From contig CBFFRP010000288.1 of NCBI GenBank assembly GCA_965644295.1, positions 62,001-126,000 of the forward strand: a DNA stretch of 64,000 nucleotides, in the 5' to 3' direction. Under the pieces are notes generated by a model that had not been told where the DNA came from, searched no databases, and saw only the letters and a program-made list of their open reading frames with translations. This document shows, one piece after another, positions 945 through 35,452 of this stretch. How positions within the stretch are numbered: the first letter of the stretch is position 1; each line of letters opens with the position of its first letter. This stretch comes from Paraphysomonas bandaiensis (lineage: Eukaryota > Protista > Chrysophyceae). The position numbers were made by a program, and so were the translations under genes.

Positions 945-1507
945 TTTATAGTTCAATATGAGAGGGGTAATATGCAGAGATCATCCTCTTAATGTGACTT
1001 ACTGCTCATGTATATGCAGTGAGACTGGTGGGGAGATATCCACAACATATCCATATAATAAAATATGCTTTTTTGTAATAAAACTCTGTAAAAATTGCAA
1101 TCGATAATATATAAACCCCCCTTTTTTATATCATTTTCCTTTCCTAAGATCATACAATACCCCAAAGTACATGCTCGAGATAACGGCTACATTATGCTGG
1201 AGGCCTGTTTGCTCCTATAATCCTTATGCTTCCACTGTTGAATAAAATTATCTTGTCCACTTACTGTGTATATGCCATGGCTGGGTAATCGGAAATCGTG
1301 CCAGAGTGCTCGTATTCTCTAAAATATATATCCCCTGTTGTTTCTGTTGTATGAATGCATGCAGCTATATCACGTACGATAATTCACACACATGATGATG
1401 TCTAAAGGTCAGCTGCTATGATTGATTCTCCAACTGGATCATCTCTTGCTTGCAACTGAACCATGAAGGCATATTGATTAGAAGTAACCACTATGCATGC
1501 CTCTGCT

Positions 1508-1595
1508 CCCTCAACAAAGTCAGACTCGCACCTTTTCGTGGTGTTCTGGGGGAAAAGTACCGGAGAGACTCTCTCTGGGAAATTAACGTGAGCCG
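1508..1595 (+). ncRNA. HDV-like (Pr77-type) ribozyme, probably inactive (catalytic C replaced by T at 1583)
   Basis: P1 CCCTCAAC/GTT(CT)GGGGG, P2 CTCGC/GTGAG, P3 ACC/GGT, L3 TTTTCGT, P1.1 TT/AA, P4 CCGGAGAG/CTCTCTGG, J4/2 TTAA. Confidence 0.65.
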
Positions 1596-2016
1596 CAAAC
1601 ATAGTCAGCAGATATTCTTCAGCCCACTCATAGCCGAATGCTTGTGTGGTACAAGGGACACCAATAAGTGTCACTTGTGTAGACGTCTTTGGGCCCTGAC
1701 AAATAAACAGGCATCCGGAAATGGGCCCACCTCAAGGGCATCCGGGACAGGGCCCACCTGAAGGGTAACCGGGGTATTGGGCTGCCTGCTGAAGTCAAGC
1801 ATCCAGGATGTTTACCTTGAGAACTCAGAGCGGAAGTGGTCGCACCTTGGTGCTTGCGGTGACGCACAAGCAGCTTCCGTAGCGTTAAATAGTAGGATAA
1901 AAAAAGTGTGTACTGATTAGTTACAGGTAGAGGTCTAACTAGTTTTCCTAGCATTCATCTAGCAACTAAGTTGGTGCAGGTTTTTAACGCCTATTGCTAA
2001 TAATAAGACTTTCAAT
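1508..2016 (+). mobile_element. Short non-autonomous retroposon (SIDER/RIME-like), copy 1, full length
   Basis: Homologous to 11394-11862, 30986-31605 and 34964-35452. Starts CCCTCAAC, ends ...CTATTGCTAATAATAAGACTTTCAAT, and is flanked by the direct repeat ATGCCTCTG (1497-1505 and 2017-2025). No credible ORF. Confidence 0.85.
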
Positions 2017-2344
2017 ATGCCTCTGTACTCCCTTCGTGTGATCATCATTTGTAGACTTCACGTCGTTTTACTGCTTCAAAAGGTTGAGCATGTTTTGTTT
2101 TCTAACCGCGATTGTATTATGGGCTATGTTTATGCACACTGTACCTCAATAGTTATGAACCGAGTATTTCATAGTTGTCTACTTCTAGTGGTGCCACTTG
2201 AACACTTTGGTGGCAAATACTACTGCTTAGAAGTAGTGTCGGGTAACCACACGATATTTAGTTAATATAGAGATAAAGTAACGTTAAATAAGAAATTTAA
2301 TTCAATTGACATTCTATAATATTGACAGTATAGTCTGCAATAGC

Positions 2345-5558: not shown

Positions 5559-8500
5559 ATGGAACAAGAGAATAATGAGGATGGACTGGAAGATCCTATG
5601 CTTCCTAAATCACATATCACTGACTCCAATACAGCAGCAGATGACTGTGAGCCAGCCTCATTATTTCAATTGCTTCAAATCAAAGAATTTTTAGATATAA
5701 TTTTAATGATATGTGGGGCAATTGCTGCTATAGTTACAGGTGCATCATTACCAGCGTTTAATGTTCTATTTGGTAGTTTGATTAATGAAATTAATGATAC
5801 GAGCTCTGGATTTGGAAGTGATATAAATCTGCTCATTCATGCATTGATTGCCCTTGCTGTGGTTAACTTGATATCTGGTGCTTTACAGGTATGATATTAT
5901 GATAACCTTTGTATAGTACATGTGTTATGCTCAATATGCTGACACGCAGGTGTACTGCTGGTCGTATAATGGCGAGCGTCAGACTAGACGACTACGTGAG
6001 TGGTATATCCGGAGCATTCTACGACAAGAGATTGGGTGGTTTGACACTTGTGGGGCGGGGGAACTCTCCACAAGGGTTGCAGACTTGTGTGGACAAGTAT
6101 GAGTTAAACGACATGCATCTGATATATTTGAAGGCTGTTTTAGGTACAGGACGGAATTGGGAGAAAATTGGGCGACATGCAGCAGTACTTTGTACAGGTA
6201 TAGATATATTGACTACGCTATGCTCTGTCAGCTATCTCTATGTCGTATGTCTTGGAAGTTGCTACGATAGCTGTATGATAGTAGACTGTGATCGTTTTGC
6301 CTGTATATGATTGGAGTGTTCGTCAAGGTGGTCGCCTCATTTGCTGCATCATTTTATCTTAGCTGGGAATTGACGGTACACAACCTTTTTTCTTTCGTTT
6401 TTATTGTAGCTAATTGACGTTGTTAAAGATTGTATTGATTGGTACTGTGCCATTTATTGGCCTAGCGGGTTGGTTCATGATAGGTATGTTGTGCTTTAGT
6501 TTCTTGTGTTTGAATTATGCTGTAGTGGATATATTTCTTGCGTTGGGTTGTGAATATGTGTAATTTCTACTGGATTTAGTTGCAGCAACGGCTGCTCAGA
6601 ATGCCTCATCAGACCAGTACGCTGCAGCAGGAGGTGTTGCCACTGAGGTAAAAGAGCGATTTAGTTGCTTTGGAAATAGTCATGATTGGCGTAAATCGCG
6701 TAGGCACTGGGCGCTGCTCGCACAGTTACTGCTCTCAACGCCCAACCTTATTTCATTCAAAAGTACGTTCATTGTACCGTTCAATTTATTTACGTTAACG
6801 ATCACTGATAGATACCGACAGCATTTGATTGACGCGATGAATGTAAGGAACTAATCTCTGTGCAATTTTCTGAATGTATTGGTTACAAGATTGGATAGGT
6901 TGGAATTGAGAAAGGTCGCAAAGTGGGTTTAGGAAACGGTCTTCTATTCGGTGTGTGTTTTCTCACTTATTCTCTCGGTTTCTGGTAGGTTTTTATGTTA
7001 TGAGCGTGCTTCAATGTATTTATGTGTCGTGTGATGTGTATACTCTTCTAGTTTTTGCTTGGTCTTTAAGTTTCACTTGACAGGTATGGTGCTCGTTTAG
7101 TGGCACGTGATATCGACCACGAGTGCAGTAGCCGTTGCGCAACTGGGGGCAAAATAATTTCTGTTTTCTTTTGTGTCATCGTCGGTGCAGTGGGTGTTGG
7201 ACAGGTAAATATGGCCCAGCGTTGAATTATGGAAACTTTCGTGATGTATTATTTTGAGTCGCTGTAATTGCGTGTATACTAATGCTTTCTTTAGTTGGCT
7301 CCTCCTGTAAATGCTTTTTTTACCGCCAAAGCTGCAGCAGGGAAAATGCTTAGCGTATGCAAACGTAAGCCTCTCATTGATGGATTATCTATTGAGGGAT
7401 ATACGCCTGAAAGTGATGTCCAAGGGAACATCGAATTAAAGGGTGTTCGATTTGCCTATCCCAGCCGTCCAGATGCCATTGTGTGTGATAACTACAATCT
7501 TTGTGTTGATTCTGGCGAGGTCGTGGCTTTGTGTGGCATGAGTGGATGTGGAAAAAGTACTATTATGAATTTGCTACTCCGTTTCTATGATCCTCAGGAG
7601 GGACAGTTACTTCTTGATGGTATAGATACGAAGTTACTAAATATACGTTGGCTCCGGTCCAAAATTGGCTACGTGGGACAGGAGCCCGTTCTGTTTAGTG
7701 GAACTATAGCAGAGAATATTGCGTATGGTATTGACAGAGATATTAACACAACTATAAGTGAAGATGAGATACGACAACGGGTAATTGAGGCCTCAAAGTT
7801 ATCTTATGCCCATGACTTTATTAGTCAATTCCCAGACGGGTATGAAACAAGGGTAGGCACCAGCGGAGTAGCCTTATCTGGAGGACAAAAGCAACGAATA
7901 GGTATGTCAGATAGAGAAGATTGTATTGAGGGCATGAAAATATAGTAGCTTTTGTATGCTTCTTTATCTGGGATTACTGCGAGTTCATACAATTAGTTAA
8001 ACTTGGATATATGTCTCTGTGTTGTATTGACTCTGCTAATTACTATACAGCTATTGCAAGGGCGCTTGTAAAACGTCCGGCTATTCTTCTCCTGGATGAA
8101 GCTACTAGTGCGTTGGACGCAGCTAGTGAGCAGATGGTGCAGCAGAGTATTGACTCTCTGCAACAATCTCGGGCACAAACTACGCTAATTATCGCCCACA
8201 GACTCAGCACCATACGCAATGCCGACCGAATAGCACTCATATCGGATGGTCAAGTTGCGGAGCTTGGCAGCCACGATGAGTTGATAACAAGAAATGGGAA
8301 ATATGCTGATCTCGTTCGTTTACAAATGACTACTACTGGGAGCGACCCTCGACAGGAAAACGACAGTGAGAAGAATATTGAGTCAAGATTACCTACTGCT
8401 AGCTCTACGCCCGCCGCTCCTACTTTAGTGGAAACTATTGGCAGCGGCCTGAGAAATGCATCAAGGAGCATGAGTTTTACAGAGAGTGATATACATGGAT

Positions 8501-10939
8501 TATTGCGTCCTGATAAAGAAGATCCTGACGGGATATCCAAAGAAGAGAAATCTCAGTTAAATAAGCGTGTATGGAAGATGATTCTACAGCACCCTATGTG
8601 GTTATTTATAGGCTTACTTGGGGCTGCATGCTTTGGCGCAGTATTTCCACTGTGGGGTATGATTTTAGCGAAGGCAGAGAATATGTTCTTCTATGAAGAT
8701 ACGGATAAGATGCGCCGAAAAGCTACAGTACAAGCCATTTATTTTGCTGCACTGGGTGCCGTGTCGTTAGTATCATGCACCTTACAATATTGGGGTGTTG
8801 CCCAGGTTGGTGAAAGGATATCTGCCCAGTTGAGATCCGACCTATTTGAAGCCTACATGCGGAGAGGAATTGCTTTCTTTGACCGAGAGGAGAACTCTGC
8901 TGGTGATCTCTGTTCCCGTCTGGCGGATGATTCCCGCACTGTGCATAAGGCTGGTGGCGAAGCACTTGCAAAACAACTGCAGGCAGCTTTCACACTGGCA
9001 GTAGGGTGTGTAATTGGATTCACTGCATCATGGAGAATAGCCCTTGTAGTCATTGCATGTTTTCCTGCGAACATAATTGCCTCAGCAGTTCAGATGCAGG
9101 CTATTGCCGGGCAGCAGTACGTACTATTTCATTCAACAGAGGTATATGCAGTTGTAATCAGTGTATATGTGCAGATACGACACAGAGGAAGATGACGATG
9201 GTCAGTTCTCAGTACTCGCATCAGCGTTTACCAATATGAGAACCGTTAGCGCGTTTTCGATGCAGTACAGGGTATGTATGCTCATAATTCAGATAAATGC
9301 ATTACTAATATTATTGTTGAGAGCAGATCAGTGAAAAGTATTGTGAACTTACAAAAGGAGTTAGTACAGCTCGGCTGCGGAGGGCACTCCTAGCTGGCAT
9401 TGGATTTGGGGCAAGCAATATGTCATTATTTTTAACCTATACCCTGCTGTTCTGGTAAGTTTATCGTATGTAAACTTCTGTTTTCATATTTTCAAGGTAT
9501 GGGCAAAGATTAATGAACAGAGACCTGGTGACGTTTCAGAACATGATGATTTCTATATTTTCTCTTATGCTTGGTGCGTTGGGTTTGGGACAAGCTCTGA
9601 TTGATATTGGTGACCAAAATGAGGGACTACGAGCTGCGAGGCGAATATTTAAAGCTTTGGATGATGCTAAAGCAGATCCCCTGGACGGTATGTCTAGAGA
9701 AGGAGCATCTCCAATCGAGTCCTGCCAAGGTGCAATTGAACTTCAAGGGGTATCATTTGCATACCCTACTCGACAGGGAATTGATGTCTGCAAGAATATT
9801 AATCTCTCGATTGCGGCGGGAGAAGTAGTAGCTGTTGTGGGGCCATCTGGGAGTGTATGTTGTACTTTGATCGCTGTATTAAATTAAGGTCCTTGTATTT
9901 TAGGGAAAATCTACCATCATGAGTTTGCTGTTGAGGTTCTATGACCCTGTGTCAGGAAACGTAAGAATCTTGTATACATTTTGCCGTTTTCTTCTATACT
10001 GATATGTCTTATAGGTTCTTATTGATGGTCATCGGATATCGGAACTAAATGTGAGGTGGCTGCGAGCACAAATAGGCTATGTAGGACAAGAGCCGGTCTT
10101 GTTTAATGGAACCATATTCGAAAACATCAAGGTGAACCATTACATATAATACTATGTACTCTTTTGGATGAGACTCCGCTTGTATGCAAGATTTGGTGCA
10201 CGTCACCTTCACATTATCTCCAACCCTGTGGTGATCATATCGTTTACAGCTAGGGTATCATGGTATGGATAAAATGACATGCCCATCTTTGGAGGAAGTG
10301 ATTTCCACTGTATCAAGAGAAAAAAGCTTGTCTACTCGTAAAATTGATAACGTGGTGGACTCTGTCACTTATCATCCTCCTGATATGTATAAAACTCCGA
10401 ATGGTGATATAGAATCCACCGACTCTTTAGAGAACATTGCCGTTGAGCATGGAGTGAGTGTGGATATTATTAGGGCCTGTATGACCAGCAATGCCCATAG
10501 CTTTATATCGAATTTTCCTGAGAGGTACGACACTAACGTAGGAGAGGGCAGCATTATGGTGTCAGGTGGTCAGAAGCAACGTATAGGTAATATCTTGCGT
10601 TATGTGAGCTATTTTTTCTTTTTACTTCTATATTATATGTATACAGCTATTGCAAGGGCGCTTGTAAAACGCCCGGCTATTCTTCTCCTGGATGAAGCTA
10701 CTAGTGCGTTGGATGCAGCTAGTGAGCAGATGGTGCAGCAGAGTATTGACTCTCTGCAACAATCTCGGGCACAAACTACGCTAATTATCGCTCATAGACT
10801 CAGCACCATACGTAATGCCGACCGAATTGTTGTCATGGATAAAGGCGTTGTCGTAGAAGAGGGCACGCACGATTCACTATTGGAAAATAGGGGCTTATAT
10901 TCCGTTCTTTGGAATAAACAGCAGGGTCACACTGATTGA
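5559..10939 (+). CDS. ABCB1: ABCB1/MDR-type full-length ABC transporter (P-glycoprotein), multi-exon
   Basis: TMD-NBD-TMD-NBD layout; Walker [10 protein letters not shown] and GPSGS/GKST, Q-loop VGQEPVLF, signatures LSGGQKQRI and VSGGQKQRI, Walker [28 protein letters not shown]. Confidence 0.97.
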
Positions 10940-11393
10940 TCTAACTAGTTCATGCTTTTTGTGTATATTTCGAAAAATTGAAGTATACGAAGTCGCATTC
11001 CTAGTTTTGTATTGGGATTTTGTATTGTACTACAATATTGTACTGATACACTGCACCTGAACACCCAGGAGTTCAAAGAACTACCATGTTTTATTCATAA
11101 CAATAATCGTATGTATCACCACTGTGTAAAAAGTTATTGTACTTGTCTGTCAACTTCACCAGATCAACCAAATTTCAACTGTTTCAATGATATGTCTAAA
11201 ATTCCAAACCTGATATTGTATCAATGTCGAAATTTGTCCAATATTTCGGCAAATGTTTCTTTAACGATATTCCACCCTGAGATTTACCTTAGTATATTTA
11301 TATCTAACCATGACAAGTGGCAACCCCTTGGCCTAATTCTGAAACCAATAATTCGGAATGGGATCAGAAAGGTATAAAGTGAGTACTGAATGT

Positions 11394-11862
11394 CTGATTA
11401 CTGATTATTAGCAATAGGCGTGTAAGAGTCAAAAGTAATGTAGCAAAACCATTTAACTAACTAGTCCTTAACTCTGATATTCTACTATTCGATTAGGGTT
11501 AGAATTAGGGTTAGCGCTACGAAAGCTGCTTGTGTGTCGCCGCAGGCACCAAGAAGGAAGAAGGTGCAACCACTCAAAGCAAACGCAGTGAGCAACCTGA
11601 CATCTGCTAACTTCAGGATTTTCGAGTTCTTAAGGTGAACAACCCGGATGGCCTTTGAGGTGGGCCCGTTCCCGGATGCCTGTGCATTTGTCATCGCCCA
11701 AAGACGTCTACACAAGTGTCCCCTGTATCACTCTGAGTGTGGGCAGAACAATATCTGCTGATTATATTATATGCAGCTCACGTTATTTTCCCAGAGAAAT
11801 ATCTCCGGTACTCCTTTCCCCCAGAACATCACAAATATGTGCGAGTTCGAATTTGTTGAGGG
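11394..11862 (-). mobile_element. Short non-autonomous retroposon, copy 2 (degenerate ribozyme, internal deletions)
   Basis: Reverse strand starts CCCTCAACAAATTCGAACTCGCAC; shares GTAGACGTCTTTGGG, GGCATCCGGGAACGGGCCCACCTCAA and the 3' CGCCTATTGCTAATAAT with copy 1; tail (TAATCAG)2. Confidence 0.85.
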
Positions 11863-17400: not shown

Positions 17401-20400
17401 GTAGCATGCTACCAATCGTACTACCCTGGTTGTGTATACCGCCGACGCTGTTGGAGAAAATCGCTTCAACACAAGGTTGATACTGTGCTGAAGTTTGAAA
17501 GTATACATTCATTGATGCGACCGCCTGATACAATTCTTCATTCACAGCGTGGGCACAATGAGGGTGAGAAAAAATTGCCTAATCAGTCTTCGATAAAAGA
17601 AAGTATGCTTGTAAATAAATTCGAATGGGAAGATGTTGTGGACTGTTGTGTTCTGTCTGCATCGAGTTTGGCTTTCACTATAAAACTGTCTGACGCAAAT
17701 TGTCAGGCGTCTCAGTGTAGCTATGTTGTTCAGAACTGCCCTGCGCACATGATTATGGACATCTTTCACATACGGCGCGGCGTACAGAAGGCACGTCGGC
17801 TAGTAGAAGAAAGTGTGGTTCCTGCCATTAGAAGTGGGCGCAGCAGATTACATAATAGTCGTGTGCAGTCGAGTGGGTTTATATCTGTTGTGACTGACAC
17901 ACAAAGAGATATTGTCGACCAGCGTGCCGTTCGGGACGCTATGATTCAACTTCGAGATATGATCGAGGCAATGGTTGTTGAAATGATCCCAAGTTTACAT
18001 GGACGGTGTAGTGGGTTTGAAGGTATATCTTCTGACGTGACTCCAGATTCCTCCCCGCCGACTACAATGATATGTGATCTTTCTCTTTATGACGCTGATT
18101 TATATGCGAAAGATGATGTTGATGTGGCGCTCGCTGCTTCCCAGCGGCCACTAGTACTACATGTTGTGTTGCCAAACCAGGCGAAATCTAATTTCGACAT
18201 CAAATATATAGTTCTAGAAAGGTTGATGGGTTACTACCGTCTGATAGCGGAGTCTACGCATTACTGTACCTTGCGACCTAATCATACCGCTTCATCTGCG
18301 ACCTCTATTCAAGTGAAGCTTAAATCACAGTACATGCCTCATAATGCCACCTCCAAGGAAATCGATGAATCTGTGACTCCAAGATCCCAGCATCGCCGTT
18401 CAAGTGGGCGGGGTGGGCATTTTTGGAAAGAAGTTAGCTTATCGCCATTCAGCCGTCCTGATTTTTCTGTGAGCGGAATTGTTGACTACGTACATAGGCT
18501 TTTGTTGGCTGCTGAAGATTCCATTTTGCGAACTTCAAACAGCGACTTTTCGTTAAGTAGAAGTGACACTTATTTGGAGCAGCAGCGCCGCGCCTTATGT
18601 GATATAGCGAATGATTGTCTATCCAAAATTGTGTCGGCGACGAGGTCGTTATTAGCGTGGAAATCGCCAGAAGACAAGACAAATAAGCTTGGCCCTTGGG
18701 CTGACGCATATCTTCCTCTCAGTTTGTTCTTTCTAAAGAATAACACACGATTGCTGATCGCAATACTAGCTGTTTCTGCATCAGCGAACTTTGGGGTGTC
18801 TAACGTTCCATGTTTTTCTCGTTTTACCAACATTCGTCATCTAATTCACTGGGAGCTACATTCGCGAGTGATTAGTATGTACACTTGGGTTCGATCTCTT
18901 CACAAAGGAGGGTTAAAGTATTTATTAGAGTCTCGATGTGCGTACTATGGAAGTCGCGTGATGTCACAATTTTTGCAGAAGGAAACGTGTACAGTCGAAA
19001 ATACTGAAGAGCATGCTGACGAGGGCAGTCAGTACTTCACGCCCATACCTGAGGTAATACTATCCGACATATCACTATTGCTTGGCTTTTCTGTATTATG
19101 TATATTGTGAGTATTGTATCTACTATTGTGTGATCAATGCGATGTAGGGGTTTCGCCATGCGCTTCGAGAATGTCTATTAGACGGTTACATGGAAGTTTG
19201 TGCTTTGTACTACACCACGGACTACTCAGACGTTACTCATGTGATTCTGCCTCAACTAGACAGATCACAGCATGACAATTATGTCACACTTCTCATGGAG
19301 AACAAGTGTTTTTCTCTCACGGCCATATCTAGACTGCATGATATAGTTGGAAACACTTTAGTAAATTGCTTATCGATTTTACTGGTACGACTCGTGATTT
19401 CATATATGTTAATTGGGTTTAAAATGTTGTTGTAGAATGAGTATATGATGATTCTTCGAGAATGTGCTGGTAAATCCAATGAAGGTAAGACATTGGTACG
19501 TATACTTTATCGACGTTATATAACTCTCATATTAGCGCCACATGAGTCGGCGAACCCTCCGACAGTTCCAGTGGAGCCCTCGTGTTTCGCGCCTCACCCA
19601 CTGATGGACGTACCCAAGTATGCTACGCGGGGGGCTCAATTAAGGACGTTACCATGGAACCGTAAATCTTTTAGCTCGGATGGGCGCTATAAACATGGCC
19701 TGGGGGGCATGCTTGATTCAGTGTTTTGCGTGATGAGTGCAATTGCCAGCGACTGTGAGCAGATCGAACGGTACATAGAGGTAAAAATTTATTGACTGTT
19801 ATTACCATATTGAGTTGATATCGTGAAAATGGGAATATAGGAGATTGCAGTAGTTATGCGCCCATTCTTTTACACGCAGCTGGTATGTATTGCCACGAAA
19901 CACTCAATTTGATAATCATAGTTCTTGTGATGTAGCTTGCGAGCCTCGAACGTAACGAGTCTGCTGCGCTGCGTAAAATAGTAAACAATATCGACAATGT
20001 ACACTCTCAATTGCACCGACTCCAAGAAAATTTTCAGAGGTGAGTGTACGTACTTTTGGCTGAAGGTATGTTCCACTTATGAACGCTCTCCGTAGGCTAT
20101 GGAAACGTGCCTTGAGAGAGCAATGTCGTGTTATATTTAAATACGTTGAATCTTTCGAATTAAATGTAAATGATGGGGAAACAAGAAAAGCCAGTAGACT
20201 TAATCTGGGTTTGAAATGGAAGCGTATTTCTAAGAAAACAAAGTCTAAGAAGAATCAATCTGGTTCCTCAATACAGGAGAAGGTCACAGAGGAAGGTGCA
20301 GATATTCAGTCGACAGAATGCAAGATTTCTGGTGCTGAGGACGCAACAGGCATCTCACCACATTCAGAATATATATGCTCGGATGCCAATAATAGTGAAC

Positions 20401-22410
20401 TTGAATCCAATGAAATGTGCCCGGAATTCATAGCGCAGAACGATTCCTCGGCTTCGAAGGAAACGGATGATGAGCATGAATCCAATGAAGAGTGTCCGGG
20501 AGTTTTAGCACAGAACAATTCTTCAGCTGCAAAGGATATGGATGATGATCATGAATCCAATGAAGAGTGTCCGGGAGTTTTAGCACAGGACAATTCTTCA
20601 GCTGCAAAGGATATGGATGATGATCATGAATCTAATGAAGAGTATTCGGGAGTTTTAGCACAGAACAATTCTCTAGCTTCAAAGGATACGGATGATGAAG
20701 AAGAAAACAACTACTCAATTGGCGGTTGTGACGATGAGCAATCTACAAGTAGCAGCGAATATGATAAAGGTCCAATTTCGTTTTTTGTCAACAACGTACA
20801 AGATATATTCGAGTCACCAGATGAGTTTGGTCGAAATTTGAATTTTCTTAGTAGACTGATATACAATTTATCGAGTCCAGAAGTATACGACATGTTTTGT
20901 AGCTACGGGCTTATAAGTATAGCGACGCCTCTGTTAAATGCCTTGACGACGGTGCATAACTATGTGGATGGCATAAATGCGGGGTTATGTGAGATGCCTA
21001 TAAATTCCTCTGAATTGAGCAGCGAGGTATGCTGGTGCATGTGTATTATGTTCATTATAAGTAGTGATACAGCTGAGGGGAGAACTGATGAATGTGTACA
21101 AGCTTGCGTATTACTTGATTCTACCTAGCTGGAAAGTTCCCAAGGATATAGCCTCCTCCTCTCCACCGTTGGAGGCCGGCGCTTTCACTACTTTATTTGG
21201 TACAGTAAAAGTCTAACTTGATCACATTAACTCGATGTTTACAGCTGTAGAGGAGACAGATGACGACTGTGCAGATAGTAGTGTACGACACGTTCGGTCT
21301 AAAATAAAGGCACGTAATTTTGTATCATTTTATCTGCGGTCACTCACTATATATGTTACTCTTCAGAGCTTAGATAAATCCCTTTTTGCGACTCTCTGTG
21401 CAATAGAAACTGCATTCAAGAAGAGAACACGAGGGTATATAGGGAACGTTAATTGAATACTGAGACTAACTTGTGGATATAAAATTGCAGGAAGGATATG
21501 GAGTTCCTAGATATATTATCTTCTATCGATGAGTTTCAATCTCCTCTAATTACGAAATTGTATTCGCGTGAGGCACAGCTAGATCTCATGTACCTTGCAT
21601 CGGATTCAGAGACCTTGCGTTCTCCACATAAACCCGATATAGTATCTATCGAGAAAGCTGGATTTAAGTATTCTGAAATGGTGGAGGTAATGTTTTTTTC
21701 TGATTTTATTTATTTTTACAGTGGAGTTTTGTAGATATCGGGGCTATGTGTGAGGGGAATCAGCTCGTTCCCCACACTCTCTGAAGAAAATGCTCAGTCT
21801 TCAACTAATAAAGACGATACACAACCGTTAACAGGTGATGCAGCGGTAGCCTCGGATACGGAGGCGCGGCGCACGAATATACCGATCAACAGCTGCTATA
21901 TTGAGATTGTCGCATATTCTAGATCTGGCACCAAAAGAAATTCCTTCCAAACAAAGGTATGAATTATGCAGCCGCAATGATATTTAACAATCCGTGGATG
22001 CTGTAATATATATGCTAGTGTGCTGCTGCAGGGGACCGAAATCCAACTTGGTTCGACGTATTTCGTTCAGATCCCCAAAGGTGATGTACTGGAACGTATC
22101 ATCTGTACTTCCAATGAAACTCGTGAATTATACTGTCAGGTGTTCGGATACTCTGCCAGGCGGCACGGATCCTTTGGAGAGACTGGACATAATGCTTTAC
22201 AATAGGCGGGTCATATCACCGGCGTCCATGCTATTTGCCGCTGTGACGGAGTCATCTCTGATTGCCAGGACTACAATACAGTTAGAAATGCTCAGACTGA
22301 ATTCTATTAGACAGTGGTTCGAAATGACTTTGTCCGAAGACTATTATCACACCGGTTGGTCAGTGATAATTCATGTTCATACACGCATTGTCAAAGAAAG
22401 AAATTCGTAG
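14494..22410 (+). CDS. Large C2-domain protein (N-terminal C2, DysF-like region, helical region, probable C-terminal C2), multi-exon
   Basis: N-terminal C2 (SPYVRI...TETLTRTRDPKWNECFKF...VKVFDS...DTLIG); VYENQF and WWYA...YRRRCWRK resemble DysF halves. The downstream same-strand ORFs appear to be linked by GT-AG introns; that joining is inferred. Confidence 0.7.
20400..20699 (+). repeat. Coding tandem repeat, 4 x 75 bp (HESNEECPGVLAQNNSSAAKDMDDD)
   Basis: Units start at 20400, 20475, 20550 and 20625. Confidence 0.92.
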
Positions 22411-23720: not shown

Positions 23721-24242
23721 ATATGAACTGTGTTCTATACTGTGACTGTGATCTTAATATAGTGATACTGTGAGGAGTGTGTGTATGTATGCATGGAGGA
23801 GTGTGTGTATGTATGTATAGAGAGAAGCTGTAGAGTGTTATTATGATCTTCTTTCGAACCATTAGAGTGAATTATATCCAATCATGTATTTTTCAGGTAG
23901 TTTAATTGGTTAGAAATGTTGGAAATGAAGATATTATGGTCTTCGTAGAATATGTCCCATATATATACCATACTGCAGTATACAGTAGAAGTATATGCAA
24001 TTGTGTACAGTGATGTATATACGTCGTAGTTGTATGTATATATGAAGGTTGGAATTCCTACTACGATCGTAGGGTTTCTGATGTACGTACATACCGATCG
24101 GCTGCAAGCATTGTTACATATACACACACATACATACATACACACATACATACGGACACACATATACATACACACACTTATATATACATACACCAGCCAC
24201 TCTGCATACCTCTCATCATATAGATCATATACTATAACAACT

Positions 24243-26856: not shown

Positions 26857-27894
26857 TTACGTATAGTTTATGTACTGAACTCGCCCATCTTTGACCGTGC
26901 GTTTGAACTGAAGCCCTAGACTCAAGTTTAGTCCTAAACCCAACAATGCATCACTAATACTACTATATTCAATCTCCCTTAACTCGGCCCTACCAACTCG
27001 AAACTTCAACTCTTTACTGCCGTTGTCACAATTAGAAACCTCAGACTTCACGGCCACATGTGTAACCCCCCCGTCGTCATTAAGTATACTAACACGAAGT
27101 TGAAAGTTCATCTCACTTCGACGTACAAGAAATGTTCCTTCCTTATTATTTATTACTTCCTGATTCTCACTTGTATCAGTAGAATCGCTCGCCCCACCAC
27201 GCACTAGATACTCAGCCCTCTCTCTTGTCATCACTCCTCCATAATACTCCCAACCACCTAACGATCTAGTATCACACTCAACTGGAGGTGGGCTTTCAAT
27301 TATGCAAGGGCCATATGCCGCCTCTGTGATAGAGTTTTTTTCTCGTCTAATATGAAGTGGTTCCATATTATTTATATGTCGTACTAATCGGTGAACAACG
27401 TCGCGGACAGGACATTGCTTATTCTGTGCTCCCCTACTGTGATCATAGTCACCAAACTGCTCATGTCCTACAGTCCAATACCAGTCTGTAAGGGAATGAC
27501 AACGTACAAAATCATCAAGCTCTTCATACTCCACACAAAGAGGAATAACATCAGCCTTATGAGCTAACACAATCACAGGTATCGCCTCATCCACATACCG
27601 TCTAAGTAACCGTACCCATGGTTCAGTAGAGGCTATAGGGTGATCACCCCCTGAATCAACTACAACCATAACCCCTATCGTATTATCAAATATATAATCA
27701 TGTACACTACGATATGATTGTAGTAAATGTCCTCCTATGTCCCATAATTGATATGTATGGTTTGATATCGTGTAGTTATGTATCTCTACACCTTGAGTAG
27801 GGGTGTGTTCATGGGGATAGTCGGAGTTAATGAGACGTGATATGATAGTAGATTTACCAACACCAGATGATCCGATAAGAAGAAGTTTGTTCAT
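26857..27894 (-). CDS. Ras/Rab-like small GTPase fused to a C-terminal SH2-like domain, single exon
   Basis: G1 GSSGVGKS, G2 PTQG, G3 WDIGG, G4 AHKAD; C-terminus WEYYGGVMTRERAEYLV...EGTFLVRRSE...LRVSI...VTHVAV. Confidence 0.8.
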   Translation of the reverse strand: MNKLLLIGSSGVGKSTIISRLINSDYPHEHTPTQGVEIHNYTISNHTYQLWDIGGHLLQSYRSVHDYIFDNTIGVMVVVDSGGDHPIASTEPWVRLLRRYVDEAIPVIVLAHKADVIPLCVEYEELDDFVRCHSLTDWYWTVGHEQFGDYDHSRGAQNKQCPVRDVVHRLVRHINNMEPLHIRREKNSITEAAYGPCIIESPPPVECDTRSLGGWEYYGGVMTRERAEYLVRGGASDSTDTSENQEVINNKEGTFLVRRSEMNFQLRVSILNDDGGVTHVAVKSEVSNCDNGSKELKFRVGRAELREIEYSSISDALLGLGLNLSLGLQFKRTVKDGRVQYINYT

Positions 27895-27952
27895 TGGTGT
27901 GACTAGTGTGTGATGAATGAATGATATGCATGATACACTGTTCCAAGACTGC

Positions 27953-28276
27953 TGTATGTATGTATGTATGTATGTATGTATGTATGTATGTATGTATGTA
28001 TGTATGTATGTATGTATGTATGTATGTATGTATGTATGTATGTATGTATGTATGTATGTATGTATGTATGTATGTATGTATGTATGTATGTATGTATGTA
28101 TGTATGTATGTATGTATGTATGTATGTATGTATGTATGTATGTATGTATGTATGTATGTATGTATGTATGTATGTATGTATGTATGTATGTATGTATGTA
28201 TGTATGTATGTATGTATGTATGTATGTATGTATGTATGTATGTATGTATGTATGTATGTATGTATGTATGTATGTA
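27953..28276. repeat. (TGTA)n microsatellite, ~81 units
   Basis: Uninterrupted TGTA tract between two divergent genes. Confidence 0.99.
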
Positions 28277-28444
28277 CCGGCTACAATGGCATTACGGGTT
28301 ACAGGTGCTGTGTTGGATATGTGTTCATGTTGTGGACTCTGCTCTGCTTATTCTTAAGAGCTCCATCAGTCTGAGCTCACTCACACGACACACATGAACA
28401 CCCACTACATAAAACACTCATCCAGATACATTTCTATTAAACTC

Positions 28445-30520
28445 ATGTCCTCACTAGTTGAAAGAACAGTACTCCAACAACTCCATAGCTTCTTTCCCTC
28501 TACTAACCCCCTTCTACTGGTAACATACATACATACATACATACATAACCCTTATATCATAATATACATATAGTTATTAAGTATAAGTGGTGGATGTGAT
28601 AGTATGACACTTCTTCATTCAATTGCTGCTGTACGGGAGAACTGGAAGGCCCCAATTAATACACATATCATCCATTTCAATCATAAGGCTCGTATAGAGT
28701 CTGATGAAGAGGTATCATACACAGTTATATTGTATCATACTGTTATTGTTATATATAATGAGATCATAGGAAACTTTTGTTCGTCATTGGGCGGATGTTT
28801 ACAATATGCCAATTCATGTATTTGCTTTCCCTGAGATGGATAGAAGATCGATAGGTTTCCAAGCTCGTGCCAGAGAATGGAGGCGTCATCATGGACAACA
28901 AGTGCTACGTAATCTATGGCAAGGATGCAGTGGGAGTGCTAGTATTCTTACTGGACATCATGCGGAAGACCAGGTGGAAACCAGAGTGATGCGGCTTCTC
29001 CGCGGTACGCACTTGTCTAGGTTAAGCGCTGTAAGGCTGTTGCATTCTACTGATATTTCCTCTGTTAATGGGGCACTTAAGATGCAGTCGAAAGAAGGCT
29101 TTTATGCTCGTCCGCTTATTCCTCTGCGAAAAAGTGATCTTATCGGATATATGCGTGAACGGGGCCTGGAATGGAGAGAGGACGTCTCGAACACTGACTG
29201 CAAGTACACAAGAAATGCTGTCAGATTGCGCCTATTACCTGAGATGGAAAAATCCGCTGGTGGGTGGGAAGCCCTGCACAGGTACATTTATGCATTTACT
29301 CTGGTAGAATTAAGACAAGTATCACTAGTTCGCTAGCTATTTCACAAGGAAAAGGTTGATGTTTTACCTGATTGCAGGCGATTGTTGGACTTAGAACAGC
29401 AGAGTAGACACCTCAGAAACTGGATTGAGAAAGAGGTATGATGAGACGTTTGACAGTGATCAGGACATTACTTTTGTATCTAGACAAATGATTTTATGAC
29501 TGCTTTTCCTGACTGGTTGCAAGAGTTCCCCAACTTAAACCGAGTGGAGGTTATTATATCCAATCCTTTCCGTAAACTTTCCCCCTTGGTGCAAACGGAA
29601 CTCCTCCGGATATTGGTTGATAGATGTGGAAGTCCTTCACACAAAGTTTGCGAAGAAACAGAGGAACTTGCTCCTTTTTTGTCTCACCGACAGACGGAGA
29701 GACTACTCTCTCTTGCACTTAGTGCTGGAGAGGAAAGTGGAGACAGTGGCAATGCCCACGTTCCATCTGCTCTCACACTCTCGCGAGAATTTCGTGCTGT
29801 GAAGGAAGGGTCGAAGCTTATTATTCACCGAATAAACTTAAAAACTGACACGTCAGTCACTACAGTCGACAATTTTACCTTTCAGAATGTTCAGTCGGGA
29901 CCCTATTCTATATCAATCCATCATCCACAGGTGTTTAAATATATTTCAATGATAGAGAAGATATAGGCTCACTACATTTGGTATGTAGGACATTCAAATC
30001 TCTGTTGAAAGGCACACCTGCAAGTGCAAGGTATGCGACGCGATAGATTACTCGAAGCCCCGCCATGGTTCTATCAGCCTACGTGGCGGTTCTGTCATCC
30101 TCTGTGGAATTCCCACGGGCGCGCAACTTGGTGTCAGGTATGTCTTCTCTTCATTGGAAGTTTATTGGCCAACGCATGCCGCTTATATGTGTAGATTCCG
30201 TAAAGCAGGTGACAAGTTCCACCCACCGTGGAGATCGGGTATTAACATGTGACATATCTTGTATTTATTAATTTTGTATTTAACAAGAATCTATAAGATT
30301 GAAAGACTTCCTTCGAGAGATTAGTATTCCTGTGGGTGATCGAGACAGTGTGCCACTAATAGATATGGACGGACAGGTGTGATGTGAAGTGTATTGGTAC
30401 TGTTGCATAATTTCTCTGCAGGTTATTGCAGTCCCTCCGTACACCGCTTCACAGTTTAGTTGTTCCAGTATAGGTGAGGTGGGGAATTCGTGCATTGTAG
30501 TAAAAATAGGTTACCAATAA
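28445..30520 (+). CDS. tilS: tRNA(Ile)-lysidine synthase TilS (organellar), multi-exon, start uncertain
   Basis: PP-loop SISGGCDS, HFNH, ARAREWR, LTGHHAEDQVET, RPLI, WREDVSN, YTRNAVR, and C-terminal RKAGDKF...LKDFLREISIP. Confidence 0.92.
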
Positions 30521-30985: not shown

Positions 30986-31605
30986 ATTATTAGCAATAGT
31001 GAATTAATAGTCAGTGCTTAACTATGATATCAGATATCCTACTGTTTAACGCTACGAATGCTATCACCACGCTCTATCACCAAGGTGCAACCACTCAAAG
31101 CTCAAAGCAAACGCAGTGAGCAAGCAAAATGTTGATATACTTGACATCTGCTGACCTCAAAATTTTTGAGTCCTTGAGGTGAACAGCCCGGATACTTGAC
31201 TTCAGCAGGTAGACCAATACCCCGGATGCCCTTGAGTCTTGAGGTGGGCCCATTCCCGGCCTGTGCATTCGTCATGACCCAAAAGACGTCTACACAAGTG
31301 ATACTATTTAGTGTTCCTTGTACCACACAAGCAGATAAAAAACGGGGAGGAGGGGACAAGGACAAGCCTTTTTTTCTACCCCCCAAACGCCCCTCAACGG
31401 GATTACCACCGTTTTCACCTGTCACAACATCCACTATTGGTATAGTAAATATTCCATTTTTGTAATCGGTTATTTTTCCATTGTTGCTGAGTGTAGTGGT
31501 TTCAAACGTTGTCTGGTTACAAAAACGGGGAGGAGGGGACAAGGACAAGCCTTTTTTAGATATGAGTGTGCAGAACAATATCTGCTGGCTATATATGCGG
31601 CTCAC
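30986..31605 (-). mobile_element. Short non-autonomous retroposon, copy 3 (5'-truncated, carries a nested insertion)
   Basis: Homology begins at GTGAGCCGC, the 3' end of the ribozyme, and ends CTATTGCTAATAAT; interrupted at 31338-31557. Confidence 0.85.
31338..31557. mobile_element. 220-bp mini-element with 37-bp terminal direct repeats and a 5-bp TSD
   Basis: AAAAACGGGGAGGAGGGGACAAGGACAAGCCTTTTTT at 31338-31374 and 31521-31557; AGATA at 31333-31337 and 31558-31562; absent from the other retroposon copies. Confidence 0.75.
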
Positions 31606-31754: not shown

Positions 31755-33549
31755 TTACGCGGTCGAAAAATCAACTATCCTAAAATGAAACAAAAAAACG
31801 ATTTATCATTTTAAAATACCATTTTGCACACTTGATCGACATTACTTGGGACACTGCTGGTTTCACTAACTACTGATGACCTACTTACTGGAGACTCTAT
31901 ACTATCCAAGCGACTATAATCATTACCACTGGGAGAGAGCTCTGTAAACGATCCATACTGCGTTTCGCGAACCTTTGTTGGAGAGATTCGGGACTCCTCC
32001 GGAATATCTTCTTGGTGAAACTCCAACTCCTTAATGTCTCGAATATTTCGCATGATACAGAACAGTAGAACATTTATTCCCATCTAAACAGTGACATATC
32101 AACACAGACTCACAGTACAACGAGTGCTACTGACCATAACGACAGTCACATAGGTCAGTACGTGCCACCCAAAGTGTGCGTATACTGTCCCGGCCGATAG
32201 ACTCCCTAATCCACTTATAGTAAACAGAAAAAAATCGAATACTGCTTGTACGTCAAGTGCTTCAGACGCCTGTCAATACACAAGACAAATGAAGTCAGTC
32301 GCTATAAGCTCTTGACGAACATCAGTTACTCACCTGATAGCACGAGGTCAACATAACTGTCCCTGACGAAAATGAAAAATTCCACGCTACCCCGATTAAT
32401 ACCATACCCACAGAGTAATTCCAAAACAAATATCCGGATGCAAACATCACAACAGCAATAGCAAATATGCAAGTGCCGAATATCGATACTGTAAACGAAC
32501 CAAAGTAAGATATAAACGAGCCTGTGAAGAACCCCGGCAAAAACATGGCCAGTAAATGTAACTCTAACACGAGAGATATGCTGAACATAGAAAAATTATA
32601 AGCATCCATACTAAGACTGAATTCGGACATAAACATGACCATTACAGTGTTTGCGACAGTAGCAGTGGTACATGAAAGGATAAAGAGTGGCTGAGTAATA
32701 ATCTCCAACATGGGACGCTTGTACTCCTCTATCCGCTCACATTCGCTTTTATTTCCATCACTATCAGCTGTGTCTATCGCCTGAGTCTTAATGTGTGAAG
32801 GGAATGCAATTGTATATAGAATGGCTTGATTGACGACAGTGTACACTCCCATCATCAGGTAGCATCCAACATAACTTGCACCGATAAGATTTTTAGTGTA
32901 CGTAGCAGACGTAGGACCCAAAAAAGCAGCAAGAACACCTCCAGATAAAACGTACGTAATAGCAGAGTTTTTGAATTCAGCAGTTGAGACGTCGATAGCC
33001 GCAAACCTAAAAGTGATAAATCATCATGAGATTACCAGGTAGGTTGTTGGAAGTGAGAGGAGGATAGTCACTCACCGATAGAACTGCCCCACACCCTACA
33101 GATAATTAACGTTATATGATAAAGAAGAGAGCACATTCGAATAGTAGAGTACCTGACCCACTCCTATGAAAAGGCATCCGGAATATAGACACACTTCACT
33201 GCTACACGATATTGCAAAAGCACAAAGTATGCACCCAAATAATTGACAGCAACATCCAATAGAAAACCCACCAAAGCGACCAAATCTATGAAATAATCTT
33301 CCAGAAGTAACAGATGATGCAGCAGCACCGATTAAAAATATCGATATTGTCAATGAAGCATTCGAACCGGATGCTCCTATAGACAGTGCGGATAGAGGCC
33401 CAACATCCTGTACGTGTATCGGATCATATAGTTATTATATATGCTATGATATGATATACCGTTAGAAATGTTGAGGTACTGAGGGTTAATGCCCAGCATA
33501 GTGCAAGTTTTATAATATCTGAAACATTCCACTGCTTATTATGTACCAT
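31755..33549 (-). CDS. Major facilitator superfamily transporter, multi-exon, 3' end approximate
   Basis: Many TM helices; GRLFHRFGRFGGF (motif A-like), QFYR/FAAVD, LELHLLAMFLPGFFTG, GVAWNFSFSSGT. Confidence 0.88.
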
Positions 33550-34257: not shown

Positions 34258-34661
34258 ATGGCAGAGGAACCTGATACACAGAAAGCAGAAGATCGCCAGG
34301 TACAATTCTACATATATATATATATATATAAATCATATGATTTTACTCGTTCATTACAGGTGAAGATTCATCGAGCGGATATTCCACCTCATATATCTGC
34401 TAAAGGCATTGAAAGAATTAATGAAGCAATGGATAAATTTCAGATTGAAAAGGTTTAATAGAATGACATGTGACGGACATGATTAATAGTGAACAGGACA
34501 TGGCAACTTACGTGAAGAAAAAGTGTGATGAAGATTTTGGAGGAACTTGGCATTGTGTTGTTGGTAGAAACTTTGGATGTTCCATCACACACGATACGAA
34601 GTATGTATTTTTCTTTCAAGTAGATCAAATGCACGTGCTTTTATTTAAATCTCACGAATAA
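34258..34661 (+). CDS. Dynein light chain type 1 (LC8 family), 3 exons
   Basis: IEK/DMATYVKKKCDEDFGGTWHCVVGRNFGCSITH...LLFKS. Confidence 0.95.
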
Positions 34662-34963: not shown

Positions 34964-35452
34964 ATTGAAAGTCTTAAAAAACCTGCACCAACTTAGTAGC
35001 TAGATGAATGCTAGGCAAACTAGTTAGACCTCTACCTGTAACTAATCAGTACACACTTTTTTTATCCTACTATTTAACGCTACGAAAGAGGCTTGTACGT
35101 CGCCGCAAGCACCAAGGTGCGACCACTTCCGCTCTGAGTTTTTAAGGTGAACATCCCGGATGCTTGACTTCAGCAGGCAGCCCAATATCCCGGTTACCCT
35201 TCAGGTGGGCCATGTCCTTGAGTCTTGAGGTGGGCCCATTCCCGGATGCCTGTGCATTCGGAATGACCCAAAGACGTCTACACAAGTGATACTTATTGCT
35301 GTCCCTTGTACCACACAAGCATTCGGCTATGAGTGGACAGAAGAATAGCTGCTGACTATTTTTGCGGCTCATGTTAGTTTCCCAGAGAGAATCTCTCCGG
35401 TACTTATCCCCCAGAACACCACGAAAAGGTGCGAGTCCGACTTTGTTGAGGG
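34964..35452 (-). mobile_element. Short non-autonomous retroposon, copy 4, full length, best-preserved ribozyme
   Basis: Colinear with copy 1 over its whole length, from CCCTCAACAAAGTCGGACTCGCACC to AAGACTTTCAAT. Confidence 0.88.
35365..35452 (-). ncRNA. HDV-like (Pr77-type) ribozyme with the catalytic C retained (35377)
   Basis: CCCTCAAC AAAGT CGGACTCGC ACC TTTTCGT GGT GTTCTGGGGG ATAAGTA CCGGAGAG ATT CTCTCTGG GAAA CTAA C ATGAGCCG, read as P1-P2-P3-L3-P3'-P1'-J1/4-P4-J4/2-P2'. Confidence 0.72.

What the first reader, a model, noticed from the sequence alone, without database searches (positions are those of the whole stretch)
1508..2016. Dense ~500-bp non-coding retroposon family (4 copies in 35 kb) with SIDER/RIME-like anatomy
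Seen: three copies share the exact 5' start CCCTCAACAAA and one is 5'-truncated. Three keep the 3' CTATTGCTAATAAT, and copy 1 has a candidate 9-bp TSD (ATGCCTCTG, offset 2 nt from the 5' end). I saw no TIRs, no tRNA-like head and no ORF. Two subfamilies are visible: copies 1 and 4 share the AAGACTTTCAAT end, while copies 2 and 3 share TTGCTCACTGCGTTTGCTTTGAG. Inference: a ribozyme-headed non-autonomous element mobilised by an ingi/Vingi- or RTE-like LINE located elsewhere.
Basis: partly seen in the sequence, partly recalled or inferred. Interest (0 to 1): 0.8.

Follow-up and report, generated by a model that had tools for sequence, protein, structure and literature searches.

The report
Diatom SINE-like retroposon with LINE tail
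This is a real, very abundant 509-base non-coding jumping element of a diatom-like alga that copies itself by borrowing the machinery of a giant LINE whose last 190 bases it carries, and whose conserved first 88 bases may be a self-cutting RNA; it is a new example of a known strategy, not a new one.

Summary
Window 1508-2016 is one copy of a 509-bp non-coding retroposon, and the window holds three more copies. All copies share a fixed 5' end (CCCTCAAC) and a fixed 3' end (…AGACTTTCAAT plus a short AT run). In 25 of 30 copies the element is flanked by target-site duplications of 8-18 bp. The genome holds at least 458 intact heads.

The partner was found. The last ~190 nt match, at 84-88%, the complete 3' UTR of two young families of a ~9.35-kb LINE. 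This LINE has a single ORF of about 3,020 codons with SET, AP-endonuclease and reverse-transcriptase domains. The shared tail starts with a two-hairpin RNA domain that shows compensatory changes.

The LINE 5' ends of three families lack the SINE head, so this is not a RIME/NARTc-type deletion derivative.

The 88-nt head fits an HDV-like ribozyme fold exactly from +1. Only 3 of 20,000 shuffles fit as well, but the descriptor was set after seeing the fold. Rfam does not recognise the head, P1.1 is weak, and similarity to trypanosome Pr77 is only marginal. I put the ribozyme at about 55%.

An ingi, Vingi or RTE clade is not established.

Other agents of this scan reported the same SINE family and the SET-carrying LINE on other DNA of this genome; my results agree.

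The parts
1508..2016 (+). Copy 1 of the 509-bp retroposon, a member of the young subfamily, 3.2% from that subfamily's consensus.
   Evidence: Full-length matches (1-509) occur at 40 or more other places in the genome.
1508..1595 (+). Conserved 88-nt head, a candidate HDV-like self-cleaving ribozyme. In the family consensus the helices are P1 1-6/40-45, P2 18-22/80-84, P3 23-25/33-35 and P4 53-59/64-70, with C75-U-A-A in J4/2. In this particular copy the putative catalytic C75 is a T, so this copy would be inactive.
1596..1826 (+). Body of unknown origin. It contains a core that is conserved across subfamilies (about 1672-1740) and a tandem pair of about 27 nt (about 1710-1766). It is unrelated to the LINE at the DNA level.
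   Evidence: Alignment A1; BLAST against the LINEs matches only the tail.
1827..2016 (+). LINE-derived 3' tail. It equals the complete 3' UTR of LINE families C and D (consensus 88% and 85% identical) and ends in …AGACTTTCAAT.
1833..1877 (+). Two-hairpin RNA domain at the start of the tail: an outer 5-bp stem, a GCAC/GUGC hairpin and a GNRA-capped hairpin. It is the probable recognition element for the LINE reverse transcriptase.
   Evidence: 98.6% of cells are paired, against 24-49% when the partners are slid. Four pairs have changes on both sides across SINE and LINE A-D. The MFE fold reproduces the domain.
1497..1505 (.). 5' target-site duplication ATGCCTCTG, followed by two extra bases (CT) at 1506-1507.
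2017..2025 (.). 3' target-site duplication ATGCCTCTG.
34964..35452 (-). Copy 4, young subfamily, 92% identical to copy 1, with an 18-nt deletion in the tail.
11387..11862 (-). Copy 2, old subfamily. It has an extra block before the tail and a LINE-C-like end (…AATAATCAGACATTCA). A telomere-like duplication is inserted at 11491-11514.
30986..31605 (-). Copy 3, old subfamily. It is 5'-truncated at about element position 80. An internal insertion is flanked by about 37-nt direct repeats (about 31338-31556).

Best explanation
The element is a SINE-like, non-autonomous non-LTR retroposon of a diatom-type alga.

Proposed mechanism:
1. Its RNA carries, as its last ~190 nt, a copy of the 3' UTR of a giant single-ORF LINE (SET-APE-RT; families C and D).
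2. The LINE's reverse transcriptase recognises this tail in trans, most likely through the conserved two-hairpin domain and the terminal …AGACWTTCA(AT)n.
3. The endonuclease nicks an A/T-rich target, the 3' AU(A) end of the RNA anneals there, and target-primed reverse transcription copies the RNA.
4. This leaves 8-18-bp duplications and occasional 5' truncations.

Shown: the family, its fixed ends, the TSDs, the shared tail, tail-structure covariation, and a young and intact partner LINE.

Inferred: recognition of the tail in trans. Also inferred: the element is transcribed by read-through or Pol II rather than Pol III, and its exact 5' end is produced by the conserved 88-nt head acting as an HDV-like self-cleaving ribozyme. 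I put the ribozyme step at about 0.55.
For: Family and ends:
- At least 40 full-length copies are at 94-96% identity to copy 1.
- There are 458 intact heads, against 0 for the reversed control pattern.
- Mean divergence from the consensus is 1.8%.
- Identical 5' and 3' ends with TSDs of 8-18 bp (mode 11-14) are seen in 25 of 30 copies, and the TSDs often begin with AT or TA.
- 5'-truncated copies exist.

Partner LINE:
- SINE positions 320-509 match the 3' ends of LINE C and LINE D at 87-88% and 84-85%, right up to the terminus. The match starts just after the LINE stop codon.
- The LINE C copy is 9,351 nt with one 3,021-codon open frame holding SET, Exo_endo_phos and RVT_1 domains. It is flanked by a 13-bp TSD.
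- At least 40 LINE C 5' ends are 99-100% identical and start at the same base.
- The LINE A copy is flanked by an 11-bp TSD.

Tail structure.

Head:
- It is nearly invariant in 33 old, otherwise diverged copies.
- The HDV-like descriptor is met at +1 by both subfamily consensuses. Only 3 of 20,000 dinucleotide shuffles and 28 of 128,000 window positions meet it. It is kept by 16 of 30 young copies and 7 of 33 old copies.
- The MFE and centroid folds give P1 from +1, a P3-like hairpin and P4.
- A truncated metagenomic homologue (L106) keeps the unpaired anchors and P3. It has a different P1 3' strand, and its P4 has two pairs changed on both sides.

Transcription:
- T4 at positions 26-29 and T5 at 473 argue against Pol III.
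- PolyA metatranscriptome contigs hold the element, some with upstream flank.
Against: - No experiment shows mobilisation in trans or self-cleavage.
- The tail is 84-88% identical to LINE C and D, not identical. A closer LINE subfamily may exist.
- Rfam's HDV-type models do not match the head even at E up to 10 on 130 nt.
- The fold departs from the canon. P1 has 6 bp, 4 nt separate P3 from P1, and no G-C P1.1 can be formed.
- My descriptor was set after seeing the fold.
- The stems P1, P2 and P3 never vary within the genome, so they give no covariation.
- Similarity to L1Tc Pr77 positions 27-77 is marginal (z 1.5-2.3).
- RNA contigs cannot show RNA ends, and DNA carry-over in the RNA libraries is not excluded.
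Confidence: 0.85

Rival explanations
1. The element is the same LINE-dependent retroposon, but the conserved head is an internal (Pol II-type) promoter or initiator that fixes the start of transcription at +1. It would not be a ribozyme, or it would be both, as is claimed for L1Tc Pr77.
For: - The head is the most conserved part across old and young subfamilies, which fits any function of the master copies.
- Rfam finds no ribozyme.
- P1.1 is weak.
- In L1Tc the same 77 nt are reported to act as both promoter and ribozyme (PMC3383444).
Against: - The fold requirements are met exactly from +1, far more often than in shuffles.
- P4 keeps pairing through indels and in the L106 homologue.
- No promoter motif was identified.
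Confidence: 0.3
2. It is a classical Pol III SINE whose tRNA-, 5S-, 7SL- or snRNA-derived head has diverged beyond recognition.
For: Its size and LINE-derived tail are those of a SINE.
Against: - There is no tRNA.
- No Rfam family matches.
- I saw no A or B box by eye.
- A T4 run at positions 26-29 and a T5 run at 473 would terminate Pol III.
Confidence: 0.05
3. It is an internally deleted LINE of the RIME, NARTc or R2-SIDE type, sharing both ends with its parent.
For: The 3' end is the LINE's 3' UTR.
Against: - The 5' ends of LINE C (at least 40 copies), LINE D and LINE A were defined and have no similarity to the head or body.
- LINE B's 5' end was not examined.
Confidence: 0.06
4. It is a DNA transposon derivative (MITE) or a Helitron fragment.
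For: None beyond its small size and high copy number.
Against: - There are no terminal inverted repeats (3 of 40 positions).
- TSD length is variable (8-18 bp).
- 5' truncations occur.
- The 3' end is shared with a LINE.
Confidence: 0.01

Closest known systems
NARTc/L1Tc and RIME/ingi, and SIDER, of trypanosomatids (PMC3383444, PMC4035085)
   Same: These are short non-coding retroposons that depend on a LINE. Their 5' end is a conserved segment of about 77-88 nt that is proposed, or for L1Tc shown, to be an HDV-like ribozyme cleaving at +1. They have TSDs.
   Different: Those elements share their first 77 nt with the LINE and have a short A-rich tail. Here only the 3' 190 nt are shared, the three examined LINE families (A, C, D) lack the head, and the tail ends in a short AT run. 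Sequence similarity to Pr77 is only marginal. The host is a diatom-type alga, not a kinetoplastid.
Stringent SINE/LINE pairs in which the LINE reverse transcriptase recognises a 3' stem-loop, such as the eel UnaSINE1/UnaL2 pair (from my own knowledge, not checked here)
   Same: The SINE carries the LINE's 3' UTR with a conserved hairpin and a short terminal repeat instead of poly(A). Mobilisation is in trans by target-primed reverse transcription.
   Different: Those SINEs have Pol III (tRNA-type) heads. This one has none and contains T4 and T5 runs.
Entamoeba EhSINEs paired with EhLINEs (from my own knowledge, not checked here)
   Same: They are SINE-like elements of about 500 bp in a protist, without a Pol III-type head, and share only the 3' end with a LINE.
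   Different: No ribozyme head is described there. Their partner is a restriction-enzyme-like-endonuclease LINE, whereas this partner is an APE-type LINE with a SET domain.
R2 SIDEs and the HDV-like ribozymes of R2 and other LINEs (PMC3774820)
   Same: A 5' HDV-like ribozyme releases the element's RNA from a co-transcript.
   Different: R2 is site-specific and its ribozyme belongs to the autonomous element. Here insertion is dispersed and the three examined LINE families (A, C, D) lack the head.

Membership tests
LINE-dependent non-autonomous retroposon (target-primed reverse transcription) | Target-site duplications of variable length flanking fixed element ends | tested here: met
   25 of 30 copies have TSDs of 8-18 bp, with a mode of 11-14 bp.
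LINE-dependent non-autonomous retroposon (target-primed reverse transcription) | 3' end shared with an autonomous LINE of the same genome | tested here: met
   SINE positions 320-509 match the 3' UTR of LINE C (87-88%) and LINE D (84-85%) up to the last base.
LINE-dependent non-autonomous retroposon (target-primed reverse transcription) | The partner LINE is intact and recently active | tested here: met
   LINE C has a 3,021-codon open frame with APE and RT domains. At least 40 of its 5' ends are 99-100% identical. LINE copies carry TSDs of 13 and 11 bp.
LINE-dependent non-autonomous retroposon (target-primed reverse transcription) | No coding capacity; 5'-truncated copies occur | tested here: met
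   The longest open frame is 74 codons. Truncated copies are seen.
Classical SINE (Repbase SINE1, SINE2, SINE3 or SINEU) | 5' head derived from a Pol III or snRNA gene (7SL, tRNA, 5S, U1/U2) | tested here: not met
   No Rfam match and no tRNA. T4 lies at positions 26-29.
HDV-like self-cleaving ribozyme | P1 helix starting at the first nucleotide of the cleaved RNA | tested here: met
   Positions 1-6 pair with 40-45 (five Watson-Crick pairs and one G-U). The MFE fold also predicts this helix. It is 6 bp long, against the canonical 7 bp.
HDV-like self-cleaving ribozyme | P2 crossing P1 (nested double pseudoknot), 3-bp P3 with a loop of about 7 nt, and a P4 hairpin | tested here: met
   P2 is 18-22/80-84 and can be extended to 14-22/80-87 with one bulge. 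P3 is 23-25/33-35 with a 7-nt L3. P4 is 53-59/64-70. Only 3 of 20,000 shuffles meet the descriptor. A 4-nt spacer between P3 and P1 is atypical. The descriptor was set after seeing the fold.
HDV-like self-cleaving ribozyme | P1.1 mini-helix (usually two G-C pairs) between L3 and J1/4 | tested here: not met
   By inspection of the consensus head, only A-U or G-U contacts are possible and no G-C pair can form.
HDV-like self-cleaving ribozyme | Catalytic cytosine in J4/2 | tested here: inconclusive
   C75-U-A-A lies just before the P2 3' strand in the consensus. This is a pattern match only. Copy 1 of the window has a T at that position.
HDV-like self-cleaving ribozyme | Covariation supporting the helices | tested here: inconclusive
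   P1, P2 and P3 are invariant among subfamilies. P4 keeps pairing through indels and through a G-C to G-U change. In the L106 homologue, two P4 pairs have changed on both sides.
HDV-like self-cleaving ribozyme | Match to curated covariance models | tested here: not met
   No HDV, CPEB3 or drz family is listed at E up to 10 on 721 nt or on 130 nt.
HDV-like self-cleaving ribozyme | Self-cleavage at the -1/+1 bond | not testable with these tools
   This needs in vitro transcription or mapping of RNA 5' ends. The available runs are kept as contigs only.
Pr77 hallmark of the ingi/L1Tc clade | Sequence homology to the 77-nt signature | tested here: inconclusive
   I compared the head with L1Tc positions 27-77, rebuilt from primers printed in PMC3185411. 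The local score is no better than shuffles. The global score gives z 1.5-2.3, a p of about 0.03-0.09.
Pr77 hallmark of the ingi/L1Tc clade | The same head on the autonomous partner LINE | tested here: not met
   The 5' ends of LINE A, C and D lack it.
ingi / Vingi / RTE LINE clades (for the partner) | Placement of the RT in the clade; an RNase H domain for ingi | not testable with these tools
   No reference RT set (Repbase, RTclass1) is on hand. Pfam finds no RNase H. The closest solved structure is the human L1 ORF2p RT, at E of about 1e-8.
MITE / Helitron | Terminal inverted repeats with a fixed-length TSD, or 5'-TC…CTRR-3' ends without a TSD | tested here: not met

The most novel reading that the evidence does not exclude
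This would be a composite retroposon of a kind not described. An HDV-like self-cleaving ribozyme that does not come from its partner LINE is fused to an unrelated body and to the 3' UTR of a giant SET-domain LINE. The ribozyme frees the element from host read-through transcripts in a diatom. It also has relatives in other marine eukaryotes (L106). That would imply this ribozyme-head strategy is much older or more widespread than the trypanosomatid and R2 cases.
Probability: 0.45. Interest if true: 0.6.

Novelty: new member of a known kind. Interest (0 to 1): 0.45.

Why it matters
Mobile elements of diatoms are mostly described as LTR retrotransposons. Here a SINE-like family with hundreds to thousands of copies and its LINE partner are both defined, and both look recently active.

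That gives three practical things:
- markers for strain typing;
- an explanation for dense repeats next to genes;
- a concrete SINE/LINE pair, with a defined 3' recognition structure, for studying target-primed reverse transcription outside animals.

If the head does cleave, it extends ribozyme-defined retroposon 5' ends to a photosynthetic stramenopile. It would also show that such a head can be acquired independently of the LINE.

Tried and rejected
- Rfam at gathering thresholds over the whole window, and at E up to 10 on the element and on a consensus-like head, gave nothing relevant. ARAGORN found no tRNA.
- I first read a second tail module in L061 (8443-8631, preceded by 87-bp tandem repeats) as a separate non-autonomous element. 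One search shows it is the true 3' end of a 10.28-kb LINE A copy. That copy is inserted into an old SINE and flanked by the 11-bp TSD ACAGCCCGGAT.
- I looked for the head at LINE 5' ends. It is absent from LINE C, D and A.
- The local alignment of the head with L1Tc Pr77 is no better than shuffles.
- Covariation within the genome cannot test P1-P3, because the heads are almost invariant.
- The metagenome pattern scan gave three chance hits and one true but 5'-cut homologue, L106. The viral-contig scan gave only one of the same chance hits.
- The laid runs were contigs, so RNA ends, strand and expression level could not be read.
- The word-based protein search found only four relatives of the LINE, none with an informative name. 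The Atlas look-up of a window ORF gave no taxon.
- Paper searches found no description of a diatom SINE of this kind or of a SET-domain LINE. That is absence from the held library only.

Full report
**Observation**

The stretch 1508-2016 is one copy of a dispersed repeat. A BLAST of this stretch against the window and a four-way alignment locate the other copies:
- copy 4 at 35452-34964 (minus strand, 92% identical);
- copy 2 at 11862-11387 (minus strand, about 76%);
- copy 3 at about 31605-30986 (minus strand, about 75%), which is 5'-truncated at about element position 80 and interrupted by an insertion.

These are the shared 5' start, the CTATTGCTAATAAT block in three copies, the AAGACTTTCAAT end in copies 1 and 4, and the block private to copies 2 and 3. 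The 9-bp duplication ATGCCTCTG flanks copy 1, with two extra bases at the 5' junction.

**Family in the genome**

The window belongs to a 62.5-Mb assembly. That assembly has about eight full-length silicon-transporter genes, which fits a diatom-type alga.

- A search with the 509 bases returns 40 full-length hits at 94-96% identity, out of 3,613 first-look candidates.
- A 24-base pattern of the head occurs 458 times, against 0 for the reversed control.
- Thirty fetched copies differ from their consensus by 1.8% on average.
- Copy 2 represents much older subfamilies, with best matches of 66-82% and 2,684 first-look candidates. Most of these start at the same first base.

**Ends and insertion signature**

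All copies start with CCCTCAAC and end with AGACTTTCAAT followed by zero to four further A/T-rich bases.

- Twenty-five of 30 copies have target-site duplications of 8-18 bp, mostly 11-14 bp. These often start with AT or TA, so the target and the RNA 3' end overlap by microhomology.
- One copy has its last 14 bases duplicated (L004).
- 5'-truncated copies occur.
- There are no terminal inverted repeats and no open frame above 74 codons.

This is the signature of target-primed reverse transcription. It is not the signature of a MITE or a Helitron.

**The partner LINE**

A search for RVT_1 in the genome, followed by a search with the RT of one hit, shows one LINE superfamily. It has at least four families: A (90-100% to the query), B (about 78%), C (55%) and D (51%).

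I fetched their 3' regions. SINE positions 320-509 align to the ends of LINE C (87-88%) and LINE D (84-85%) right up to the terminus. The match begins about 45 nt after the LINE stop codon. The SINE tail is therefore the LINE's complete 3' UTR.

Families A and B share only the conserved hairpin region and the terminal AATAATCAGAC… motif.

A full LINE C copy has these features:
- It spans G000:C440:13290-3940 and is 9,351 nt long.
- It has one 3,021-codon open frame with SET, AP-endonuclease and RVT_1 domains, no RNase H hit, and a C-terminal CX2CX8HX4C motif.
- It is flanked by a 13-bp duplication.
- At least 40 LINE C 5' ends are 99-100% identical and begin at the same base, so the family is very young.

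A LINE A copy of 10.28 kb sits inside an old SINE copy, flanked by an 11-bp duplication.

The closest solved structure is the RT of human L1 ORF2p. The clade (Ambal, RTE-like, or other) could not be assigned. The literature says only that diatoms hold 'RTE-like' and 'Ambal' LINEs (PMC2806351; PMC12803021).

**Tail structure**

The first 45 nt of the shared tail (window 1833-1877) form three helices: an outer 5-bp stem, a GCAC/GUGC hairpin and a GNRA-capped hairpin.

- Across the SINE and LINE A-D, 98.6% of cells pair, against 24-49% when the partners are slid.
- Four pairs changed on both sides. Because the sequences fall into two lineages (SINE/C/D and A/B), these are few independent events.
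- The MFE fold of the SINE tail predicts the same domain.
- In copy 2, a 10-nt insertion sits in the loop of the first hairpin and leaves the stem intact.

I infer that this domain, together with the terminal motif, is what the LINE reverse transcriptase recognises.

**The head**

The 5' ends of LINE C, D and A have no similarity to the SINE head or body. The element is therefore not a RIME/NARTc-type deletion derivative.

The first 88 nt are almost invariant in 33 old copies whose other parts have diverged. That points to a function in the source copies.

On the consensus I can draw an HDV-like nested double pseudoknot that starts at +1:
- P1: 1-6 with 40-45;
- P2: 18-22 with 80-84, extendable to 14-22 with 80-87 with one bulge;
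- P3: 23-25 with 33-35, with a 7-nt loop;
- P4: 53-59 with 64-70;
- C75-U-A-A before the P2 3' strand.

A relaxed descriptor of my own, written after seeing the fold, gave these counts:
- it is met by both subfamily consensuses;
- it is met by 3 of 20,000 dinucleotide shuffles;
- it is met by 28 of 128,000 window positions;
- it is met by 16 of 30 young copies and 7 of 33 old copies.

Copy 1 in the window fails because C75 is a T.

The plain MFE fold independently gives P1 from +1 and P4, and the centroid adds a P3-like hairpin. The three P4 variants in the genome all keep pairing.

One metagenomic homologue (L106) is cut by its contig end 6 nt before L3. It keeps the unpaired anchors and P3. 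Its P1 3' strand is unrelated in sequence and directly abuts P3. In its P4, two pairs have changed on both sides.

Evidence against the ribozyme:
- no Rfam HDV-type model matches at E up to 10;
- P1 has 6 bp;
- 4 nt separate P3 from P1;
- no G-C P1.1 can form;
- P1-P3 show no covariation.

I also compared the head with L1Tc positions 27-77, rebuilt from primers printed in PMC3185411. The similarity is not better than shuffles locally, and only marginal globally (z 1.5-2.3). The 'Pr77 signature' is therefore a resemblance, not shown homology.

**Transcription**

T4 at positions 26-29 and T5 at 473 argue against Pol III.

Contigs of polyA metatranscriptomes hold family members exactly within the element's limits, some with unrelated upstream sequence. 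This is compatible with co-transcription. However, contigs cannot show RNA ends, and DNA carry-over is not excluded.

**Verdict**

This is a real, abundant, recently active SINE-like retroposon. It is mobilised through the 3' UTR of a giant SET-APE-RT LINE, and its head is plausibly an HDV-like ribozyme (about 0.55).

Earlier notes of this scan on other DNA of the same genome reached the same general reading. These are s1-443475, s1-439144 and s1-436732 for the SINE and ribozyme, and s1-443463, s1-440729 and others for the SET-carrying LINE.

What I add:
- the assignment of the partner to families C and D;
- the absence of the head from three LINE 5' ends;
- the tail-structure covariation;
- the TSD statistics;
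- the finding that the Pr77 similarity is not statistically solid.

Noticed in passing
G000:C440:3940-13290 (loci L065, L069, L067); also L061/L062 (C426): The partner LINE family encodes a PR/SET-type domain in frame ahead of the endonuclease. Its motifs YINDPL and EELLINYG are conserved between LINE A and LINE C. The metagenomic relatives P0001 (72%) and P0003 (44%) carry SET and APE in the same order. I found no paper describing a SET-domain LINE. Pfam gave no OTU hit at E up to 0.1, although earlier notes of this scan mention OTU-like modules.
   Followed up: partly
G000:C426:349853-360130 (L062:2854 to L061:8631): A full 10.28-kb LINE A copy is inserted into an old SINE copy, flanked by the 11-bp TSD ACAGCCCGGAT. 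Its 5' part holds three in-frame tandem repeats of about 160 nt. Its 3' UTR holds an internal duplicate of the tail module (L061:7533-7726) and about 5.4 copies of an 87-bp tandem repeat (L061:7966-8439).
   Followed up: partly
G000:C143:23925-24804 and 33411-34290: A LINE D copy (C143:24806-33412) is flanked by a perfect 880-bp direct repeat. This could be an unusually long target duplication, a recombination product or an assembly artefact. The repeated stretch itself contains two other dispersed repeat families, of about 490 nt and about 320 nt, each with many copies.
   Followed up: no
L106:1-60 (metagenome contig Ga0316042_109360): This is a homologue of the head from another organism. 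The L3, J1/4 and J4/2 anchors and P3 are the same, while the P1 3' strand and the P4 stem differ. The contig is cut 6 nt upstream of L3, and the following 1.3 kb are non-coding.
   Followed up: partly
window 11491-11514 (minus strand, inside copy 2): A telomere-like sequence is inserted in the tail of the old copy: two units of about 11 nt, CTAACCCTAAT and TCTAACCCTAA(TC).
   Followed up: no
window 31338-31556 (minus strand, inside copy 3): An internal insertion of about 180 nt is bounded by about 37-nt direct repeats (AAAAAAGGCTTGTCCTTGTCCCC…).
   Followed up: no
window 27793-28600: A long (GTAT)n microsatellite, reported by the repeat tool as 8-nt units. Related tracts lie at 24103-24193 and 53802-54114 in inverted orientation.
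   Followed up: no
window 8044-8240 and 10640-10836: A 197-nt direct repeat at 95% identity. The first copy lies inside an ORF with an ABC-transporter membrane domain (8011-9195), which suggests a tandem gene or exon duplication.
   Followed up: no
window 20396-20695: A tandem array of about four 75-nt units at 83-87% identity.
   Followed up: no
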